The position numbers and the translations under genes were made by a program. 64,000 nt of DNA, from positions 372,001 through 436,000 of the IMG/VR virus record IMGVR_UViG_3300032782_000001; one strand, given 5' to 3'. This document shows, piece after piece, positions 57,895 to 64,000 of the stretch. Within the stretch, counting starts at the first letter, position 1. Each line of letters opens with the position of its first letter. The notes beneath the pieces are model-generated. The model was not told the DNA's origin, made no database searches, and saw only the letters and a program-made list of their open reading frames with translations.

Positions 57895-58155
57895 TCACTC
57901 GGGCAGAACGGCCAGGGCGGCGCGGAAGAGGGCCGGGCGGCCGGTCATGAAGACCCAGGGCGCCCCGTCTTCCTCGTCGCCTTGACGGAACAGGGCGACG
58001 CAGGAGTTGCCCCGGGCGACGAGGCCAACCGCGTTCCCCTTGAGGTCAGGGCCGGCGTGCCCCTGGTTGACGTTGATCTTGGGGTCACCCGAGACCTTCA
58101 CTTGGTACTCGCGACCCGAGAACACGAACGAACCCTCGAAGGACCATTTGCTCAT
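57895..58155 (-). CDS. Small early-type hypothetical protein
   Basis: ATG 58155, 8 nt after the promoter motif; 86 aa. Confidence 0.7.
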   Translation of the reverse strand: MSKWSFEGSFVFSGREYQVKVSGDPKINVNQGHAGPDLKGNAVGLVARGNSCVALFRQGDEEDGAPWVFMTGRPALFRAALAVLPE

Positions 58156-58207
58156 GGGTTGCAATACGGCGAGGGCCGCCAGGTTTCCCCAGCGGCCCTC
58201 GGTCCGT

Positions 58208-58435
58208 CTAGCAGCGCTCCATGCGGCGCGCCCACCGCTCGTAGTCCTCGACCTGCTCCTCCGTCATCTTGGGGACGAGAGGAGTCCGGGAGCCAGACTC
58301 GTCCTCGTACTCGAGCGTGTCGCCGTGCGAGGCCATGTTCGGGCTGACGCATTGCCCGATGGGTGCGTGCTTGACGAGCCGGGTCAGGGGCTTGGCCGTG
58401 CGGTCTGCGTCGAGACGTGCCTTCTTCGTGTCCAT
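58208..58435 (-). CDS. Small hypothetical protein, paralogue of 60439-60627
   Basis: GGAGGTG RBS plus promoter motif; KARLDADRTAKP...VKHAPIGQCV...LEYEDE. Confidence 0.75.
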   Translation of the reverse strand: MDTKKARLDADRTAKPLTRLVKHAPIGQCVSPNMASHGDTLEYEDESGSRTPLVPKMTEEQVEDYERWARRMERC

Positions 58436-58506
58436 CGTCGTCACCTCCGACCTGGAATACGACAAGAGGGACCGGACTTGCGCCCGGTCCCCTGGGTCCT
58501 GGTGGG

Positions 58507-58725
58507 CTATTCGCCCTTGGCCGCTTTCCTTCCTGCTTCGGTGACCCTGATGTTGCCTTCCGCGTCCTCTTCGAGCATGCCGCGGCGCAGCAATGCTTCG
58601 TGCGTCACGATGTTCTGGTGGTGCGTCGGGCGTCGCATGCCGATCTTGGTCTTTTGACCCTTGTTGCTGTCTTCGACCCCGACGCACCATTTGAGATCTT
58701 CGAGCATCCGCTGGCTGAGCTTCAT
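58507..58725 (-). CDS. Small winged-helix-like hypothetical protein
   Basis: RBS plus promoter motif; EALLRRGMLE...IRVTEAGRKA. Confidence 0.7.
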   Translation of the reverse strand: MKLSQRMLEDLKWCVGVEDSNKGQKTKIGMRRPTHHQNIVTHEALLRRGMLEEDAEGNIRVTEAGRKAAKGE

Positions 58726-58774
58726 CCCGTCACCTCCGGGGCAGAATACGCCCCGGAGCGCGGAATTTGCGGCT

Positions 58775-59011
58775 TTAGGGCACTTCCATCCGGACGGTGA
58801 TTTGGTCGTCCTTCCCTTCCCATCCGTCCGGGTGCGCGTCGTAGAAGCCATCCCGGACTTCGAGGTTGCCCACGAGGACGCCCGACTCGTCCTGCTCGGT
58901 GTGGAATTCCCCGACCGCCGTATGCCACGCCACGATGTTCTTAGCGCGTCGGATCGCTTCGTCCGACGTCATGGTGTCCGGCTTCTCGATCCCGATGAAG
59001 ACCATTTCCAT
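58775..59011 (-). CDS. Small hypothetical protein
   Basis: RBS plus promoter motif; 78 aa. Confidence 0.7.
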   Translation of the reverse strand: MEMVFIGIEKPDTMTSDEAIRRAKNIVAWHTAVGEFHTEQDESGVLVGNLEVRDGFYDAHPDGWEGKDDQITVRMEVP

Positions 59012-59062
59012 CTCGTCACCTCCAGCCAGGAATACGGCCGGAGGTGCGAGATTTACAGGCCT

Positions 59063-59278
59063 TCAGGCTGCGAACCGGGTTGCTTCCTCGGCGAAGACCG
59101 AGAGAACGTCGGCCGCTTCCTCGAGTTCGGTCTCGAGGAAATCGACCTGTGCCTGGTTGTATTCCAAGTCCTCGTAGTCGGTGTAGCCCTCCGCGTCCGT
59201 GGACGCTGCGTGAGCCGCCTCGTACGCATCCCCGATGGCCATTCCGAGCAGCGAATCCCTGGCGATCACCTTCTCCAT
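59063..59278 (-). CDS. Small acidic hypothetical protein
   Basis: RBS plus promoter motif; ATG 59278. Confidence 0.7.
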   Translation of the reverse strand: MEKVIARDSLLGMAIGDAYEAAHAASTDAEGYTDYEDLEYNQAQVDFLETELEEAADVLSVFAEEATRFAA

Positions 59279-59364
59279 TGTCGTCACCTCCGACCAGGAA
59301 TACGACGGAGAACGCAGGATTTACAAGTCTGAAGCGGCGCGCGGCGGATTTCTGCTCTGCCCGG

Positions 59365-59436
59365 AGGATCCGGCGGGATTCGAACCCGCGACCATGGGGT
59401 TAAAAGCCCCTAGCTCTACCCCTGAGCTACGGATCC
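59365..59436 (-). tRNA. tRNA-Lys (anticodon UUU)
   Basis: Cloverleaf: acceptor GGATCCG/CGGATCC, D arm GCTC-AGGGGTA-GAGC, anticodon loop CT-TTT-AA, T arm GCGGG-TTCGAAT-CCCGC. One A-A mismatch at the top of the anticodon stem; no encoded CCA. Confidence 0.93.
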
Positions 59437-59438
59437 AA

Positions 59439-59454
59439 TGTTTCACGTGAAAAC
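59439..59454. promoter_or_regulatory. parS-like site
   Basis: TGTTTCACGTGAAAAC versus consensus TGTTTCACGTGAAACA (14/16); intergenic. Confidence 0.5.
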
Positions 59455-59457
59455 ATC

Positions 59458-59487
59458 GGGACGGCGGGTGTAGTGACCCGCCGTCCC
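59458..59487. terminator. 12-bp GC hairpin after the 59499-59684 gene
   Basis: gggacggcgggt-gtagtg-acccgccgtccc. Confidence 0.55.
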
Positions 59488-59498
59488 TTGGGGTTGTG

Positions 59499-59684
59499 TC
59501 AGCCCACGCCGTAGACCGCCATGTGCTCGATCCACGGATGGACGCGGACCCCACGCTTGGTCGGGGGCGGCGGTTCCGTGGCCCATGCCGCGTACGCCTT
59601 GCAGTCTTCGCACTCCCCGCAAGGCTCCGGCTCGCCCGTGCAGACCTTGGAATCCTCGACCGGCGCATTGAACCTCGTGTTCAT
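59499..59684 (-). CDS. Small Cys-containing protein
   Basis: RBS plus promoter motif; C...PCGECEDC. Confidence 0.7.
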   Translation of the reverse strand: MNTRFNAPVEDSKVCTGEPEPCGECEDCKAYAAWATEPPPPTKRGVRVHPWIEHMAVYGVG

Positions 59685-59726
59685 CGTCATCACCTCCGAC
59701 CATGAATACGGCCGGAGGCGACGGAT

Positions 59727-59999
59727 TTACACCTCGCGGATTTGGTCTCGCGCCTCGCGCTTGTGGAACTGGCGACGCACCTTGCCCACCAGCTGCTTGA
59801 CGCGGTGCGTCGACCGACCACCAGTAGCGGCAGTGCTGTAGCGGTCGAGGTGGCCGTCGCGGAAGGTCGCGCAGATCTCCGAGCCGAAGTGGCCGGCTTG
59901 GAAGCGTTGACCGATCGTCATCTTCGGATGGTTGCGCGACGGCTCCGAGAGCCACTTCGTGTACCGCATCGTGGGAACCTTGCGCGTCGTCCTTGCCAT
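59727..59999 (-). CDS. Small basic hypothetical protein
   Basis: RBS plus promoter motif; ATG 59999. Confidence 0.7.
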   Translation of the reverse strand: MARTTRKVPTMRYTKWLSEPSRNHPKMTIGQRFQAGHFGSEICATFRDGHLDRYSTAATGGRSTHRVKQLVGKVRRQFHKREARDQIREV

Positions 60000-60004
60000 C
60001 TCGA

Positions 60005-60193
60005 TCACCTCCGTTTCTGAGTACGCGACCGAGAGTTGGACTTGCAACTCCAAAACACCGTCAAGTACGGGCCGACGTACGAGCGGTCTGACTTCAGGAG
60101 CTTGTTGCCCATCTTCTCGAGAAAGGCGTCAATCTCCTCGTCCGAGTCGAAGCGCTTGCTGTGCTCGTAGTCCACCCCATCCAACATTGGCAT
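60005..60193 (-). CDS. Small hypothetical protein
   Basis: RBS plus promoter motif; ATG 60193. Confidence 0.6.
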   Translation of the reverse strand: MPMLDGVDYEHSKRFDSDEEIDAFLEKMGNKLLKSDRSYVGPYLTVFWSCKSNSRSRTQKRR

Positions 60194-60255
60194 GTTGTCA
60201 CCTCCAATTTGGAATACGACGGAGAAGGCCGGACTTGCGCCCGGCCCTTGCCCGA

Positions 60256-60390
60256 TCAGCCCACAGGCCCGCGCACCTCGCAGGCGAGCCAGACCAGACC
60301 GTGCCAGACCCCCTGGCGCCGGAAGTACGCGATCCAGCCCCCGAACTCCTCCGAAACGAGCCGCGGCAACCGCACGAGACGAGAAACCAT
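60256..60390 (-). CDS. 44-aa microprotein (below the ORF-track cutoff)
   Basis: GGAGGTG RBS plus promoter motif; MVSRLVRLPRLVSEEFGGWIAYFRRQGVWHGLVWLACEVRGPVG. Confidence 0.65.
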   Translation of the reverse strand: MVSRLVRLPRLVSEEFGGWIAYFRRQGVWHGLVWLACEVRGPVG

Positions 60391-60438
60391 GTCCGCCACC
60401 TCCGGCCGAGGATACGACCGGAGGTGGCGGATTTGCGG

Positions 60439-60627
60439 TCAGGTGAGCTTGGTGCGGAGCCCGTCCTCGTCCTCGTACTCGAGGTCCGTGAGGTGCGTGT
60501 GCGGTCCGACGCACTGGCCGACGGGCACGTGCTTGACGATTCGCGTCTTCGGCTTGGCGGTCTTGTCCGCGTCGAGACGGGCCTTCTGGCAGAGCGTGTC
60601 GTAGTCGTCCAAGAGCTTCGTGTTCAT
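60439..60627 (-). CDS. Small hypothetical protein, paralogue of 58208-58435
   Basis: RBS plus promoter motif; KARLDADKTAKP...VKHVPVGQCV...LEYEDE. Confidence 0.75.
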   Translation of the reverse strand: MNTKLLDDYDTLCQKARLDADKTAKPKTRIVKHVPVGQCVGPHTHLTDLEYEDEDGLRTKLT

Positions 60628-60689
60628 CGAATCACCTCCGACTGAGAGTACGGCGGAGAGGGCCGGACTTGCGCCCGGCCCCCGGCCCT

Positions 60690-60929
60690 TCAGGGCGCCT
60701 CGACCATCAGGTCCAGAAACGCCTGGCCATCCGGCGTAAGCGCTTCGGCGTCCACGAAGCCCACAGCCGTCTGCCGGGTCCGCAAGTCGGCCGTCTGTCC
60801 CTCGGCCGTCTCGCCCACGGTGAGGCGGTCCGAGAAGAGGCCGGCCTGCGTCCCATCCGCCCAACAGACCGCGATCGTCAGGCCCAGGCCCAGGCTGTCC
60901 GCGAACACCGCCTTGTTCGTCAATTTCAT
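60690..60929 (-). CDS. Small hypothetical protein
   Basis: RBS plus promoter motif; ends ALTPDGQAFL (wHTH-like). Confidence 0.7.
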   Translation of the reverse strand: MKLTNKAVFADSLGLGLTIAVCWADGTQAGLFSDRLTVGETAEGQTADLRTRQTAVGFVDAEALTPDGQAFLDLMVEAP

Positions 60930-61024
60930 CGTCGTCACCTCCGACCAGGAATACGGCAGGACGGGCGGGATTTACACGACGCGGGCCGGGTTGTAAATCC
61001 CCCGGCCCGCGTCGTATTCGGATC

Positions 61025-61375
61025 TCAGTGGCAGCGGAGCGTAACCGTCCGGCTGCCCCACGCGCCCTGGCCGCTGCCGGGCTTCGCGTTCCAGAGCGCA
61101 CCGACCTCTCGGGTCTCGCCGTCGTTGCAGGGGGCCGCTTGCACGTGGACCGCCTTGGGCGCGGGGCGCGGCTTGGACGCCACGATCGTGATCGGGATCT
61201 CGAGGGGCGCGGGCTCGTCGTGGGCCTTCTCGGGCGCCGGTGCGGGCTTGGGCGCCTCCTGCGTGGCCACGGGCGCCGCCTTGGCCGTGGGCTCCACGAA
61301 CGTGCTTCCGAGCCAGACGCTCGCGGCCGCCGCCAGGATCCACGCGCCGATCGTCGCCATCGTCTTCTTCGTCAT
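61025..61375 (-). CDS. Small secreted or membrane-anchored Pro/Ala-rich protein
   Basis: RBS plus promoter motif; TM IGAWILAAAASVWLG; PA-rich linker; C-terminal C...C domain. Confidence 0.7.
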   Translation of the reverse strand: MTKKTMATIGAWILAAAASVWLGSTFVEPTAKAAPVATQEAPKPAPAPEKAHDEPAPLEIPITIVASKPRPAPKAVHVQAAPCNDGETREVGALWNAKPGSGQGAWGSRTVTLRCH

Positions 61376-61555
61376 GATCATCACCTCCATCCCCCGATAC
61401 GACGACGAGCCGCAGACTTCCGAACCCGGCAGGCCTATGCAAATTGTTGCAAGTTGGAAGTATTGGAGGACGGAGGGGGCTTGCGTGTCTCGTTCCAATT
61501 GCAAGACATGACGATGCCCAGACTCCGTAAATTGGAGCCCGGGCATCGTATGCGT

Positions 61556-61738
61556 TCAGCGGCAGCCGCGTGCGTTGAACCGCGGGTCTCGCTCGTGGTT
61601 CTTCTGCCACGTGGTGGGCCGCTTGGCTCCTGCGTCGCGCGGCGCGCTGGCGAGGAGCCTTTCGTAGAAGCCGGGCTCCTTGTCGTGGCAGCCTTCGGGC
61701 GGCGAGCATCGCAACGTGTCGGGTTCTTGGTCGTCCAT
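61556..61738 (-). CDS. Small hypothetical protein
   Basis: RBS plus promoter motif; ATG 61738; 60 aa. Confidence 0.55.
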   Translation of the reverse strand: MDDQEPDTLRCSPPEGCHDKEPGFYERLLASAPRDAGAKRPTTWQKNHERDPRFNARGCR

Positions 61739-61846
61739 CGCGTCACCTCCGCCCACGCATACGACGACGAGCCGCAGACTTCCGAACCCGGCAGCGGGCC
61801 GCAAATTGTGCTGTGGGTGCCGTATCACTGGTTGGAGGTGACGACA

Positions 61847-62374
61847 ATGAACCAGGACATCGACACGCAGGTTTCGGATTCTCTCTTCGGCGCGGCTCTC
61901 GTTCAGGCGGTTCTCGCGGAGCCCGAGACCACGGAGCCCTGCCCCGCGACGGCCCGCTCGGCCAAGCCCGCGGAAATCCAGCCCGCCACGGCGTACTCCA
62001 AGTCGGAGGTGACGACGATGAACCAGAACAGCTACCCGTTCCGCAGCAAGGCCCAGATCGCAGCAGCTCTCGCCGAAAGCGCGCCCTTCCGCCTCGAGTG
62101 CCTCGGCATCCTGTTCGATCGCCAGACGGCGTACGAACAGAGCTCCGAGACCACGCTCAACCGCAACCGCCAGGGCTTCATGAGCTCGCACGCCGTCCAC
62201 GGCTGCCGCATCGCCAAGAAGATGCGGGCCGGCGAGGAGCTCACCGCCGAGGATCTCGATCGCGTCGCGACGATCGTGCCGCGCTACACCCGCCAGCTCG
62301 CCGAGCACTTCCGCCACGAGGCGGTTGCGGCGAACCCGGCCCTCAAGGCGGCGGCCGCAGTCTTCGGGGTCTGA
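61847..62374 (+). CDS. Hypothetical protein with a second in-frame start at 62018
   Basis: Two promoter-plus-GGAGGTG cassettes give ATG 61847 and ATG 62018 in the same frame; both begin MNQ. Confidence 0.7.
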   Translation: MNQDIDTQVSDSLFGAALVQAVLAEPETTEPCPATARSAKPAEIQPATAYSKSEVTTMNQNSYPFRSKAQIAAALAESAPFRLECLGILFDRQTAYEQSSETTLNRNRQGFMSSHAVHGCRIAKKMRAGEELTAEDLDRVATIVPRYTRQLAEHFRHEAVAANPALKAAAAVFGV

Positions 62375-62420
62375 GATCGGACCAGGGGGGCGCGTAACCG
62401 GAAGGCCGGTACGCGCCCGG

Positions 62421-62470
62421 CCAACAGCCAAAGCACGATTCCAATATTGGAATCGTGCTTTGGCTGTTGG
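62421..62470. repeat. Perfect 50-bp palindrome (no loop)
   Basis: ccaacagccaaagcacgattccaat|attggaatcgtgctttggctgttgg. Confidence 0.95.
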
Positions 62471-62542
62471 ATTTCTGTCTCTTCGGTTTTCGTCGTCTCG
62501 TAGATCCGTCGGTCCGCGGCGTATCCCAGATCGGAGGTGACG

Positions 62543-62815
62543 ATGACGACGATCGAAAGCGCCGTTTACAAGCCGTTGGAGCAGGACGAGCAGCCGGGCA
62601 TGCCGACCTTCCGCGTGAAGGGTGTGTACGATGGGGCTCCGTTCGAAGGGGAACTGTCCGTCGAGGTCGACGGACGGGACATCGAGTGGAAGGGAACGCC
62701 TGACCCGGACGGCCCGGATTGGAACTCCGGGATGTGTGCTGCCATCATCGAGGAGCTCTGGAGTCTTCCCGCTTGGGAAGACGCCCGGTCGGAGCACGGC
62801 GAGTACATGGGCTGA
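62543..62815 (+). CDS. Small acidic hypothetical protein
   Basis: RBS plus promoter motif; ATG 62543. Confidence 0.7.
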   Translation: MTTIESAVYKPLEQDEQPGMPTFRVKGVYDGAPFEGELSVEVDGRDIEWKGTPDPDGPDWNSGMCAAIIEELWSLPAWEDARSEHGEYMG

Positions 62816-62860
62816 ACAGACATGCCGGAGGGATCTGAATGATCCCTCCGGCATGTCTGT
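62816..62860. repeat. 20-bp perfect inverted repeat with a 5-nt loop
   Basis: acagacatgccggagggatc-tgaat-gatccctccggcatgtctgt. Confidence 0.95.
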
Positions 62861-62983
62861 ATTGGGGGATCTGTAAGTTTCTCCATACCTACGTGTATAT
62901 TTACACGTTGCCTCCGGCCGTGGACGCACGGGTGACGAGTGGCGGAGCTGCCTGAAGCCGGATAAAGGGGACAGCCGCTCTTT

Positions 62984-63020
62984 ATCTATGGCAGGGATCA
63001 CGGCGATCCCTGCCATAGAT
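62984..63020. repeat. 16-bp perfect inverted repeat with a 5-nt loop
   Basis: atctatggcagggatc-acggc-gatccctgccatagat. Confidence 0.95.
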
Positions 63021-63041
63021 CTTTGGTAAAATCCTTAGGTC

Positions 63042-63368
63042 ATGACGCCGAGCCAGGTTGCCCAGTCCCTCCGCCACATCGCTTCCAAGATCGACAACTC
63101 CAAGTTGCCCGACCGGACTTTGGTCGCGCGCGACCTGCGCGGTTTGCTCACGCAGATTGCGCAGGAGCAAGAGGAGTGCGGCATGGGTGGGGTTGCCCAA
63201 CAGCAGCAGGGTCAGCAGGAGCAGCAGGCTCTTCCGAAGTCCGGCGTCGGCCAGCAGATGCTCATGGAGGCCATCAGCGAGCTTCAGGACGCTGCGAAGT
63301 CCGGCGACCACAGCAAGTTCGAGAAGGCTCTCGCCAAGGTCAACGGCGCCAAGGCGAAGGCTGGCTGA
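63042..63368 (+). CDS. Hypothetical Gln-rich helical protein
   Basis: 108 aa; LRHIASKIDN helix; QQQQGQQEQQ; flanked by related hairpins. Confidence 0.7.
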   Translation: MTPSQVAQSLRHIASKIDNSKLPDRTLVARDLRGLLTQIAQEQEECGMGGVAQQQQGQQEQQALPKSGVGQQMLMEAISELQDAAKSGDHSKFEKALAKVNGAKAKAG

Positions 63369-63420
63369 AATATCTGGCAGGGATGAAAGAAAACCCTGCC
63401 GGATACTCGGGCGTCGCGGT

Positions 63421-63531
63421 TTACGATCCGTAGTACCAGAGCGGGATGCGCTTGTAGACGCCAGGTCCCTGGATGACGTACCAGGGCTTGTTGTTGATGA
63501 TCTGCACTTCCCCATTGATCTTGTTCGGCAT
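63421..63531 (-). CDS. 36-aa microprotein (below the ORF-track cutoff)
   Basis: GGAGGTG RBS plus promoter motif; MPNKINGEVQIINNKPWYVIQGPGVYKRIPLWYYGS. Confidence 0.65.
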   Translation of the reverse strand: MPNKINGEVQIINNKPWYVIQGPGVYKRIPLWYYGS

Positions 63532-63679
63532 CGCGTCACCTCCACTGTTCGGGTACGCGGCGAATCCGTCGATCTATGGCAGTATTCAGTTTGATCTATG
63601 CCAGATAGTCGTCAAGCCGGCCAGGAACCCATTCCCAGTCGGCTTGACGGTGGCGACGACGCCAACTCTTTTAACGATT

Positions 63680-63758
63680 GCTGATAGGCGGGAGTCGAAC
63701 CCGCCGCCGCGTACCACCTGACCGGTTTCTCGCCGACGAAAGCGTTACTCCCTGTCAG
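63680..63758 (-). ncRNA. tRNA-like element (T arm plus possible acceptor stem; no canonical D or anticodon arm)
   Basis: GCGGG-TTCGACT-CCCGC T arm, followed by CTATCAG that can pair with upstream CTGACAG (6/7). Confidence 0.4.
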
Positions 63759-64000
63759 GTTCGTCAGTTACGCGACCCGAAGCCCCGGATCGTGCTATTG
63801 CGCGCGGTAGTGGTCCAGACTGCGGCCTCTTGGGTTGTCTTCCCTTGGTGAGGCGCCGCGTGTCTCTTGCACTGCCGCGCTAAGTTTTTACGTCGACTAG
63901 AGGAAGATCTCGCGGAGCTCAGACAAGACCTTCTTGCGATCCTTCGACGAGAGCTCCTTCCGCGTACCTGTTGTTCTCTTCGTAGACTTCGACCACGGAC

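What the first reader, a model, noticed from the sequence alone, without database searches (positions are those of the whole stretch)
62816..63410. Family of long hairpins sharing an AGGGATC-N5-GATCCCT apex or a TGGCAGGG stem
Seen: a 20-bp (62816-60) and a 16-bp (62984-63020) perfect stem have different outer arms but the same AGGGATC-N5-GATCCCT top. A third (63371-63405, TATCTGGCAGGG...CCCTGCCGGATA) and a looser fourth near 63571-63606 reuse the ATCT(A)TGGCAG arm. Hairpins 2 and 3 bracket gene 63042-63368. Inference: binding sites for a dimeric protein, hairpin promoters or origins on ssDNA, or ends of a tiny mobile cassette.
Basis: partly seen in the sequence, partly recalled or inferred. 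Interest (0 to 1): 0.6.

Follow-up and report, generated by a model that had tools for sequence, protein, structure and literature searches.

The report
Phased TGSCA sites, some forming hairpins
The long hairpins are real and belong to a conserved family of short DNA sites, set exactly two helical turns apart, that sit at gene boundaries in one arm of a 436-kb wetland phage and its relatives. They are most likely binding sites for a phage regulator, and some also fold as hairpins.

Summary
H1 (62816-62860, 20-bp stem), H2 (62984-63020, 16 bp) and H3 (63371-63405, 12 bp with one T-G) are exact. The "fourth" (63571-63606) is not a hairpin but a direct repeat of the same unit.

The window is the right end of a 436,316-bp virus record. 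H2, H3 and site 4 belong to a family built on a 13-nt unit, CCCTGSCAYAYAT. Two TGSCA cores lie exactly 17 nt apart, which gives 22-bp phasing.
- This genome has 7 such pairs against 0.5 expected. All 7 lie in its high-GC arm.
- The same spacing peak and motif enrichment occur in two related phages of 393 and 377 kb.
- Motif units or pairs also lie downstream of a conserved 118-aa gene (62018-62374) in 12 of 18 loci from 10 contigs.

Members with non-complementary spacers or direct-repeat layout keep the phasing, which argues for recognition of double-stranded DNA by a protein. A subset has fully self-complementary spacers of differing sequence: H2, three more in this genome and some in relatives. 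H1 is a diverged palindrome without the cores, so hairpin or cruciform formation also seems to matter.

The sites lie between stop and start codons and mostly lack U-tracts. No Y1 transposase was found. No RNA data exist, so function remains inferred.

The parts
62816..62860 (.). H1: perfect 20-bp palindrome with a 5-nt loop, starting directly after the stop of gene 62543-62815. It shares the GGGATC-N5-GATCCC apex with H2. Its cores are degenerate (TGCCG / CGGCA) and 21 nt apart, not 17. It is a diverged family member that has kept perfect pairing.
   Evidence: my comparison of its arm with the unit found in the relative
62984..63020 (.). H2: two full units in inverted orientation. Cores are TGGCA 62989-62993 and TGCCA 63011-63015, 17 nt apart. 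The palindrome is 16 bp perfect and ends 21 nt before the ATG at 63042.
63371..63405 (.). H3: an inverted pair with a non-complementary 11-nt centre. Cores are TGGCA 63375-63379 and TGCCG 63397-63401, 17 nt apart. It lies between the convergent genes 63042-63368 (+) and 63421-63531 (-).
63571..63606 (.). Site 4: two units in direct repeat, not a hairpin. Cores are at 63577-63581 and 63599-63603, 17 nt apart. On the minus strand it lies just upstream of, and overlaps, the -35-like position of the promoter-like cassette of gene 63421-63531.
63042..63368 (+). Gene C, 108 aa, with no Pfam or PHROG match. Its N-terminal ~40 aa is shared by paralogs in this genome (genome 3153-3272, 15144-15284, 327908-328036) and in relatives. 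It is bracketed by H2 and H3. Its ortholog in the 393-kb relative has no flanking sites.
62543..62815 (+). Gene B, 90 aa, an ORFan with its own promoter-like and Shine-Dalgarno cassette. It fills the variable slot between gene A and the first site.
62018..62374 (+). Gene A, 118 aa, all-helical, with a conserved NRxGFMSSHA loop. It is the only gene conserved next to the site clusters in 18 loci from 10 contigs. This makes it a candidate partner of the sites, but that is inferred, not shown.
   Evidence: no Pfam, PDB or fold match
63421..63531 (-). Gene D, 36 aa, with a promoter-like and Shine-Dalgarno cassette at about 63534-63575. It converges on gene C, and site 4 lies upstream of it.
62421..62470 (.). 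Perfect 25-bp palindrome with a T-rich tail, downstream of gene A. It is the only hairpin in this stretch that the terminator scan flags. It is unrelated in sequence to the family.
   Evidence: contigs of the source run break here

Best explanation
H2, H3 and site 4 are members of a clade-specific family of cis-acting DNA sites, and H1 is a diverged relative.

The unit is about 13 nt, CCCTGSCAYAYAT: a TGSCA core with an AT-rich outer flank and a CCC or CGATCCC inner flank. Units occur singly, in short arrays, and most often as pairs whose cores are exactly 17 nt apart. That is 22 bp from core to core, or two helical turns, so both cores face the same side of the duplex.

I infer that a phage-encoded sequence-specific DNA-binding protein binds them cooperatively. 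It would act at gene boundaries in the high-GC, ORFan-rich arm, by blocking read-through or controlling the adjacent promoter, much as operator and 'stoperator' sites do in Cluster A mycobacteriophages. The conserved neighbouring gene A product is the only candidate in hand.

In this genome most inverted pairs also have fully self-complementary spacers. On RNA or on supercoiled DNA they can therefore form 12-20-bp hairpins or cruciforms, which probably add an insulating or terminating effect.

Shown: the motif, its phasing, its conservation, its placement and the hairpin subclass. Inferred: protein binding, the identity of the protein and the effect on transcription.
For: 1. Phasing. In a scan of TGGCA-Nd-TGCCA for d = 9-29, the highest count in each genome is at d = 17 (in the 377-kb relative only 3, against 0-2 elsewhere).
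- This genome: 7 pairs against 0.53 expected (P 1.5e-6).
- The 393-kb relative: 5 against 0.35 expected, plus 7 in the swapped-core form (P 1e-7).
- The 377-kb relative: 3 against 0.55 expected.

2. The phasing holds where no hairpin can form: genome 3364, 22143 and 435577 (= window 63577), sites in both relatives, and direct-repeat pairs.

3. Unit enrichment. TGCCAYAKAY-type units number 16, 16 and 13 against 3, 2 and 2 for the reversed control. With the looser TGSCA-core pattern, 14 of 20, 16 of 24 and 16 of 29 lie in arms that make up 14-16% of each genome. Arrays occur at 18-24-bp intervals.

4. Conservation across genomes that share only about 54-65% protein identity.
- Clusters lie downstream of every gene A homolog in the three genomes.
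- Across 18 loci there are 52 sites downstream against 15 upstream. Twelve loci have sites downstream, the first usually 390-630 nt after the stop.
- A site or a motif-like pair also follows the DUF2201 ortholog in all three genomes.

5. Placement at gene boundaries.
- Sites start 0-9 nt after a stop codon at H1, H3 and genome 22143, 31396 and 44086.
- A start codon follows 8-21 nt after four of the hairpins.
- Some sites abut or overlap the promoter-like cassette (site 4; relative 325524 and 330405).

6. They cannot be strong constitutive terminators. The genes after genome 31430 and 44112 have no cassette promoter of their own, and the hairpins lack U-tracts.
Against: - No protein has been shown or predicted to bind. 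Gene A has no recognisable DNA-binding fold, and its weak fold rows are mostly HEPN-like.
- A plain dimer operator does not need arms that are perfect over 16-20 bp.
- It also does not need spacers that stay complementary while differing in sequence. These are 8 of 8 pairs in three sites here and one in a relative, against 0.6% of background 17-mers reaching 6 of 8 or more.
- H1 keeps perfect pairing after losing the cores and the 17-nt spacing. This points to selection on the hairpin itself.
- Six of 18 gene A loci show no sites.
- There are no RNA or binding data.
Confidence: 0.45

Rival explanations
1. They are RNA-level hairpins: factor-independent terminators, attenuators, or 3'-end stabilisers or processing sites between cistrons. 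On this view the shared stem sequence reflects common descent by local duplication, and the non-hairpin copies are decayed remnants.
For: - The hairpins are very stable (-21 to -44 kcal/mol, z -4.7 to -10.4).
- They start 0-40 nt after stop codons.
- Spacers and outer stems differ between copies yet stay complementary.
- H1 keeps a perfect 20-bp stem without the cores.
- The one mismatch in H3 is a T-G on the + strand, which would be a G-U pair in gene C's mRNA.
- H3 lies between convergent genes, where a bidirectional terminator makes sense.
Against: - Most have no U-tract, and the terminator scan flags none of H1-H3.
- Downstream genes after genome 31430 and 44112 lack promoters of their own, so efficient termination there would silence them.
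- Cores and the exact 17-nt spacing are conserved in members that cannot fold and in direct repeats, across at least three genomes. Decay would not preserve this.
- Single units and tandem arrays exist.
Confidence: 0.22
2. The unit is a promoter element for host RNA polymerase carrying one of the two phage sigma factors. The palindromic versions would then be composite terminator-promoter modules.
For: - The phage encodes two sigma-70-family proteins.
- A start codon follows four hairpins within 8-21 nt.
- The unit resembles the -10-like part of the abundant cassette (CCTGCCGTATTCC in one cassette against CCTGCCATATATT).
- Genes after genome 31430 and 44112 need some promoter.
- T4-type PeSLs set a precedent for composite terminator-promoter motifs (PMC4122927).
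Against: - With a start codon only 8-21 nt away, a transcript starting 6-8 nt after the element would cut off the strong Shine-Dalgarno sequences seen at genome 31432 and 44117.
- Palindromic sites would also fire antisense into the upstream gene.
- H3 lies between convergent genes.
- Tandem units at 18-24-bp intervals (genome 51421-51484; relatives) are not how promoters are arranged.
- No consistent partner element sits at -35 distance. This is my inspection of the sites.
Confidence: 0.15
3. They are recombination hot-spots or miniature mobile palindromes (PeSL-like or REPIN-like) that move ORFan cassettes such as gene 63042 in and out of the arm.
For: - H2 and H3 bracket gene C. A paralog (genome 2817-3272, minus strand) is bracketed in the same way by genome 3364 and 2739-2777.
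- The ortholog of gene C in the 393-kb relative lies elsewhere.
- The genes between gene A and the first site are non-homologous between relatives.
- Singlets plus inverted doublets resemble the REP/REPIN layout. That comparison rests on my own knowledge of REPINs.
Against: - No Y1 (RAYT or IS200-type) transposase was found, with a valid control.
- Copies are few and differ outside the core, rather than forming a cloud around a master sequence.
- Other gene C paralogs have no flanking sites.
- The ortholog in the relative did not carry the sites with it.
- Exact phasing is not explained by mobility.
Confidence: 0.1

Closest known systems
Operator and 'stoperator' sites of Cluster A mycobacteriophage repressors (L5 gp71, TipsytheTRex; PMC9283540, PMC6550527)
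   Same: A 13-bp unit is present in more than a dozen copies per genome. Copies lie both in promoter regions and in short intergenic gaps between co-directional genes, where a bound protein could stop elongation.
   Different: - Here the units are mostly paired at a fixed 22-bp phasing, and often as perfect palindromes. L5 sites are single, asymmetric and oriented with transcription.
- No repressor has been identified here.
- The phages here are about 0.4 Mb, uncultivated and of unknown lifestyle.
- The sites are confined to one arm.
PeSL composite terminator-promoter motifs of T4-type phages (PMC2839356, PMC4122927)
   Same: Both are repeated stem-loop-containing motifs lying between small ORFan genes in a hyperplastic region. 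In both, gene content between the motifs differs among relatives.
   Different: - PeSLs pair a short stem-loop with a recognisable sigma-70-type -35/N17/-10 promoter.
- Here the conserved part is inside the stem and no standard promoter is attached.
- Non-hairpin members here keep an exact core spacing.
Intrinsic (Rho-independent) terminators
   Same: Both are GC-rich stem-loops placed just after stop codons. One (H3) lies between convergent genes.
   Different: - Stems here are 12-20 bp and perfect.
- Most have no U-tract.
- The stem sequence is conserved across genomes.
- Members that cannot fold exist.
REP/REPIN elements with RAYT transposases
   Same: Both are short palindromic units found as singlets and as inverted doublets that form long hairpins in intergenic DNA.
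   Different: - No Y1 transposase is present in the genome.
- Copy number is low.
- There is no master-sequence pattern.
- The core and its spacing are conserved between genomes that share only about 55% protein identity.

Membership tests
Intrinsic terminator | Stable GC-rich stem-loop downstream of a stop codon | tested here: met
   H1 starts 0 nt and H3 2 nt after a stop. Genome 31396 starts 9 nt and 44086 2 nt after a stop.
Intrinsic terminator | Run of T (U) directly 3' of the stem | tested here: not met
   The scan flags only 62422-62469 in this stretch. H1, H3 and genome 31396 and 44086 have no T-run. H2 and genome 2739 have partial ones.
Intrinsic terminator | Transcript 3' ends at the hairpin | not testable with these tools
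   Only DNA runs from wetland metagenomes hold the sequence.
Operator / stoperator network | Conserved unit of about 13 bp, in many copies, in promoters and short intergenic gaps | tested here: met
   placement.
Operator / stoperator network | Site orientation follows the direction of transcription | tested here: inconclusive
   Most sites are inverted pairs. The few single sites are mixed in orientation.
Operator / stoperator network | A cognate DNA-binding repressor encoded by the phage | tested here: inconclusive
   Gene A is the only conserved neighbour, but it has no recognisable DNA-binding domain or fold. The rest of the proteome was not screened.
PeSL (T4-type) | Stem-loop directly joined to a recognisable early promoter | tested here: inconclusive
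   Some sites abut the promoter-like cassette (site 4; relative 325524 and 330405). H1-H3 and genome 31396 and 44086 have none.
PeSL (T4-type) | Located in hyperplastic ORFan regions, with gene content between the motifs differing among relatives | tested here: met
REP/REPIN | A RAYT / Y1 transposase in the same genome | tested here: not met
   PF01797 gave no match in the genome, and the control rang in 6 of 14 genomes.
IS200/IS605 ends or integron attC | Y1 transposase or IntI, plus characteristic core sites and extrahelical bases | tested here: not met
   No Y1 transposase. The stems are perfect, with no bulges and no GTTRRRY-type cores. IntI was not searched for.
N4-type hairpin promoter | 5-7-bp stem with a 3-nt loop, recognised by a virion single-subunit RNA polymerase | tested here: inconclusive
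   Stems here are 12-20 bp. PF00940 found nothing, but its control rang nowhere.

The most novel reading that the evidence does not exclude
Gene A and the phased TGSCA-N17-TGSCA sites form a previously undescribed regulator-and-site module, conserved across a clade of 0.1-0.44-Mb uncultivated phage contigs. In this reading a new type of small helical protein binds sites that are both duplex operators and extrudable hairpins. The sites fence off slots in which ORFan genes are exchanged, acting as a combined roadblock, terminator and cassette boundary.
Probability: 0.25. Interest if true: 0.65.

Novelty: new variant of a known kind. Interest (0 to 1): 0.5.

Why it matters
Gene regulation in huge, uncultivated phages is almost unknown. 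This work gives a concrete, testable cis-element:
- a defined unit with an exact two-turn phasing;
- sites in this genome, two related genomes and seven further contigs;
- one conserved candidate partner gene.

If binding is confirmed, the element would provide an entry point into how such phages time or insulate expression of their ORFan-rich arm. It would also show how perfect palindromes can act both as protein sites and as hairpins. If the sites turn out to be plain terminators, the finding is ordinary.

Tried and rejected
- Rfam on the last 3 kb and first 20 kb of the genome. It returned only spurious miRNA-precursor rows for long hairpins, plus one tRNA. No known RNA family covers H1-H3.
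- Megablast of 62400-64000 against phage records: no match.
- Exact hairpin pattern across IMG/VR: 21 unrelated single hits, about the number I estimate by chance.
- Word-based locus search with the two larger neighbouring proteins: nothing. Relatives were found instead through the promoter-like cassette pattern.
- Sequencing runs: four wetland DNA runs and no RNA. The laid contigs gave no variation inside H1-H3.
- Gene A function. There was no Pfam or PDB sequence match. An AF2 model (pLDDT 79) had no Foldseek match and VIA Z of at most 4.2. Atlas neighbours are unnamed viral clusters. Several weak rows are HEPN domains, and the conserved loop has an R-x6-H spacing. I treat that as a lead only.
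- Sigma-54, sigma-70 extended -10, Bacteroidetes -7, sigma-28 and sigma-32 readings of the unit. I compared these by eye and dropped them because the spacing or key bases do not fit.
- Replication origin. The cumulative GC-skew minimum in this genome lies at about 22 kb, where I also see the switch in gene strand. The sites are spread over about 60 kb, so this is not supported.
- A crude test of distance from each unit to the next start codon was uninformative in the relatives.

Full report
**Setting.** The window is bases 372001-436000 of a 436,316-bp virus record with a 127-bp terminal overlap, rated complete. Most of the genome is about 47% GC. An arm running from about 428 kb across the record's ends to about 50 kb is 55-64% GC. 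The finding lies in this arm. The arm is packed with small ORFan genes. About 38 of them are preceded by a conserved cassette: G[CT]AAAT[TC]C, 12 nt, CGTAT[TC]C, 6-7 nt, GGAGGTGACGA, then the start codon.

**The observation.** H1, H2 and H3 are exactly as described. They fold far better than shuffled sequence, with z of -9.9, -8.2 and -6.9. The shared apex GGGATC-N5-GATCCC occurs only at H1 and H2 in the whole genome. The fourth site does not fold better than chance. It is a direct repeat of a 12-nt word with a TGGCA or TGCCA centre.

A list of all perfect hairpins in the genome shows three more with the TGGCAGGG stem, at genome 2739-2777, 31396-31430 and 44086-44112. All three are in the arm. 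The exact pattern TGGCAGGG-N11-CCCTGCCA gives only 21 unrelated single hits in 2.9 million viral contigs, about what I estimate by chance. Four copies in one genome are therefore not chance.

**What is shared.** The conserved element is a unit of about 13 nt, CCCTGSCAYAYAT, often preceded by CGAT.
- A 12-nt form with one mismatch allowed hits 12 times in this genome, 11 of them in the arm.
- A search with the promoter-like cassette found two related complete records of 393,220 and 376,674 bp. Both share a DUF2201 ortholog at 54-65% identity, and the 393-kb relative also has a high-GC arm with the same cassette.
- TGCCAYAKAY-type units number 16, 16 and 13 in the three genomes, against 3, 2 and 2 for the reversed control.
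- With the looser TGSCA-core pattern, 14 of 20, 16 of 24 and 16 of 29 units lie in arms that are 14-16% of each genome.

**Phasing.** I scanned every spacing from 9 to 29 nt between TGGCA and TGCCA. In the 436-kb and 393-kb genomes the only clear peak is at 17 nt; in the 377-kb genome 17 nt gives the highest count by a small margin.
- This genome has 7 pairs against 0.53 expected (P 1.5e-6).
- The 393-kb relative has 5 pairs, plus 7 with the two core variants swapped (P 3.5e-5 and 1e-7).
- The 377-kb relative has 3 pairs (P 0.02).

The seven in this genome include H2 and site 4. H3 has the same spacing with one core base changed. The central base of the core does not define orientation. The flanks do: AT-rich outside, GGG or CCC inside.

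Three of the seven have spacers that cannot pair (genome 3364, 22143 and site 4), as do most pairs in the 377-kb relative. Direct-repeat pairs exist at the same spacing. Units also form arrays at 18-24-bp intervals, for example at genome 51421-51484 and 206046-206088 in the 377-kb relative. A core-to-core distance of 22 bp is two helical turns. This is the layout expected for cooperative binding of a protein to one face of duplex DNA. It is not expected of an RNA structure.

**The hairpin subclass.** Spacer self-complementarity is bimodal. Among background 17-mers, 0.6% reach 6 or more of 8 possible pairs.
- Three sites in this genome and one in another contig have 8 of 8.
- H2 has 7 of 8.
- One site in the 393-kb relative has 6 of 8.
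- The rest are near background.

The paired spacers differ in sequence between sites, and the two arms share their deviations from the consensus. H1 shows the same tendency. Its arm resembles the unit with two extra bases and changed core bases. The changes are mirrored in both arms, so a perfect 20-bp stem remains although the cores and the 17-nt spacing are lost. Something therefore keeps these palindromes perfect. That is either selection for a hairpin or cruciform, or a copying process that homogenises the arms. I cannot tell which.

**Placement.** Sites lie at gene boundaries.
- H1 starts directly after the stop of gene B.
- H3 starts 2 nt after the stop of gene C.
- Genome 22143, 31396 and 44086 start 3, 9 and 2 nt after stops.
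- H2, genome 2739 (minus strand), 31396 and 44086 are followed by a start codon after 21, 8, 14 and 16 nt.
- Site 4 overlaps the -35-like position of gene D's cassette.
- Sites at 325524 and 330405 in the 393-kb relative sit just upstream of cassettes.

The terminator scan flags none of H1-H3, because they lack T-runs. The genes after genome 31430 and 44112 have no cassette of their own, so those two hairpins cannot be efficient unconditional terminators.

**Conserved neighbour.** Every homolog of gene A (62018-62374) in the three genomes is followed by a site cluster. A search with the gene A alignment returned 16 loci from 9 contigs. Adding the two loci of this genome gives 18 loci.
- 52 units or pairs lie within 3 kb downstream and 15 upstream. 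Seven of the 15 are the neighbouring cluster of this genome.
- 12 of the 18 loci have sites, with the first usually 390-630 nt after the stop. This leaves room for about one variable ORF, as with gene B here.
- Gene A is the only protein family shared by these neighbourhoods.
- Its function is unknown. There is no Pfam or PDB match, it is an all-helical model, and it has no convincing fold match.

**The cassette idea.** H2 and H3 bracket gene C. A paralog at genome 2817-3272 (minus strand) is bracketed the same way. However, two other paralogs have no sites. The true ortholog in the 393-kb relative lies in the low-GC body without sites. No Y1 transposase is present. The sites are therefore not carried with the gene. 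Exchange of genes between fixed sites remains possible.

**Transcription machinery.** The phage encodes two sigma-70-family proteins. No RNA polymerase beta match was found. The search for a T7-type polymerase was uninformative. No RNA data exist: only four wetland DNA runs hold the sequence.

**Conclusion.** The best-supported reading is a family of protein-binding DNA sites with two-turn phasing that act at gene boundaries in the arm. A subclass, dominant in this genome and including H1 and H2, also forms long hairpins. The closest known parallels are the operator and stoperator sites of Cluster A mycobacteriophages (PMC9283540) and the PeSL motifs of T4-type phages (PMC4122927). It is not a member of either family. 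Plain terminators, promoters for a phage sigma factor, and recombination sites remain live rivals. The tests that would separate them are listed under next steps.

Noticed in passing
window 58000-64000 and genome 1-42000 (e.g. window 62500-62545, 61990-62020, 63534-63575 minus strand): About 38 copies of a promoter-like and Shine-Dalgarno cassette precede small genes on both strands. The layout is G[CT]AAAT[TC]C, 12 nt, CGTAT[TC]C, 6-7 nt, GGAGGTGACGA, then the start codon. Copies occur only in the high-GC arm, and the 393-kb relative has them too. The layout resembles ECF-type sigma promoters, and the phage encodes a 221-aa sigma-70-family protein.
   Followed up: partly
window 60392-60431; genome 396-433, 706-743, 4471-4518, 16958-16997: In five cassettes the spacer between the -35-like and -10-like parts is the exact complement of the Shine-Dalgarno block. 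This forms 13-18-bp palindromes (TCGTCACCTCCGG ... CCGGAGGTGACGA). Such a stem would mask the ribosome site only on transcripts that read through from upstream.
   Followed up: no
window 62421-62470: A perfect 25-bp palindrome with a T-rich tail lies after gene A. Contigs of the source run break exactly here.
   Followed up: partly
window 63676-63797 (minus strand): A tRNA-like T-arm and acceptor remnant (GGCGGGTTCGACTCCCGCC) that ARAGORN and Rfam do not call. One contig from another wetland run skips exactly 63676-63797 (120 nt). A similar remnant lies next to a site in the 393-kb relative, near 340020.
   Followed up: partly
window 63042-63160; genome 3153-3272, 15144-15284, 327908-328036, 163757-163864: The first ~40 residues of gene C (MTPSxVAxSLRxIAxKIDxS...) head a family of proteins with unrelated C-termini. 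There are 4-5 copies here, 3 in the 393-kb relative and 8 or more in the 377-kb relative. This could be a shared targeting or assembly domain.
   Followed up: partly
genome 35-90 kb mainly (e.g. 46501, 53194, 59182); also 266514/266531: There are 24 copies of ATGGAATCATGA at gene junctions. The upstream gene ends ...V-M-E-S-stop and the next ATG overlaps the TGA. This looks like a conserved translational-coupling junction.
   Followed up: partly
genome 8796-8894 (L003): A 99-nt hairpin with 44 of 45 stem positions paired. It hits plant and animal miRNA-precursor models in Rfam only because of its shape.
   Followed up: no
window 61847-62374: The ORF starting at 61847, which has its own cassette, runs in frame without a stop into gene A. 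Gene A has a second cassette at 62005. This is either two nested starts or a recent fusion.
   Followed up: no
whole genome: GC content is strongly heterogeneous. It is 63% in the last 6 kb, 55-60% in the first 45 kb and near 304-311 kb, and about 47% elsewhere. Collagen-like repeat words (GGTCCTCAAGG and similar) are among the commonest 10-mers.
   Followed up: no
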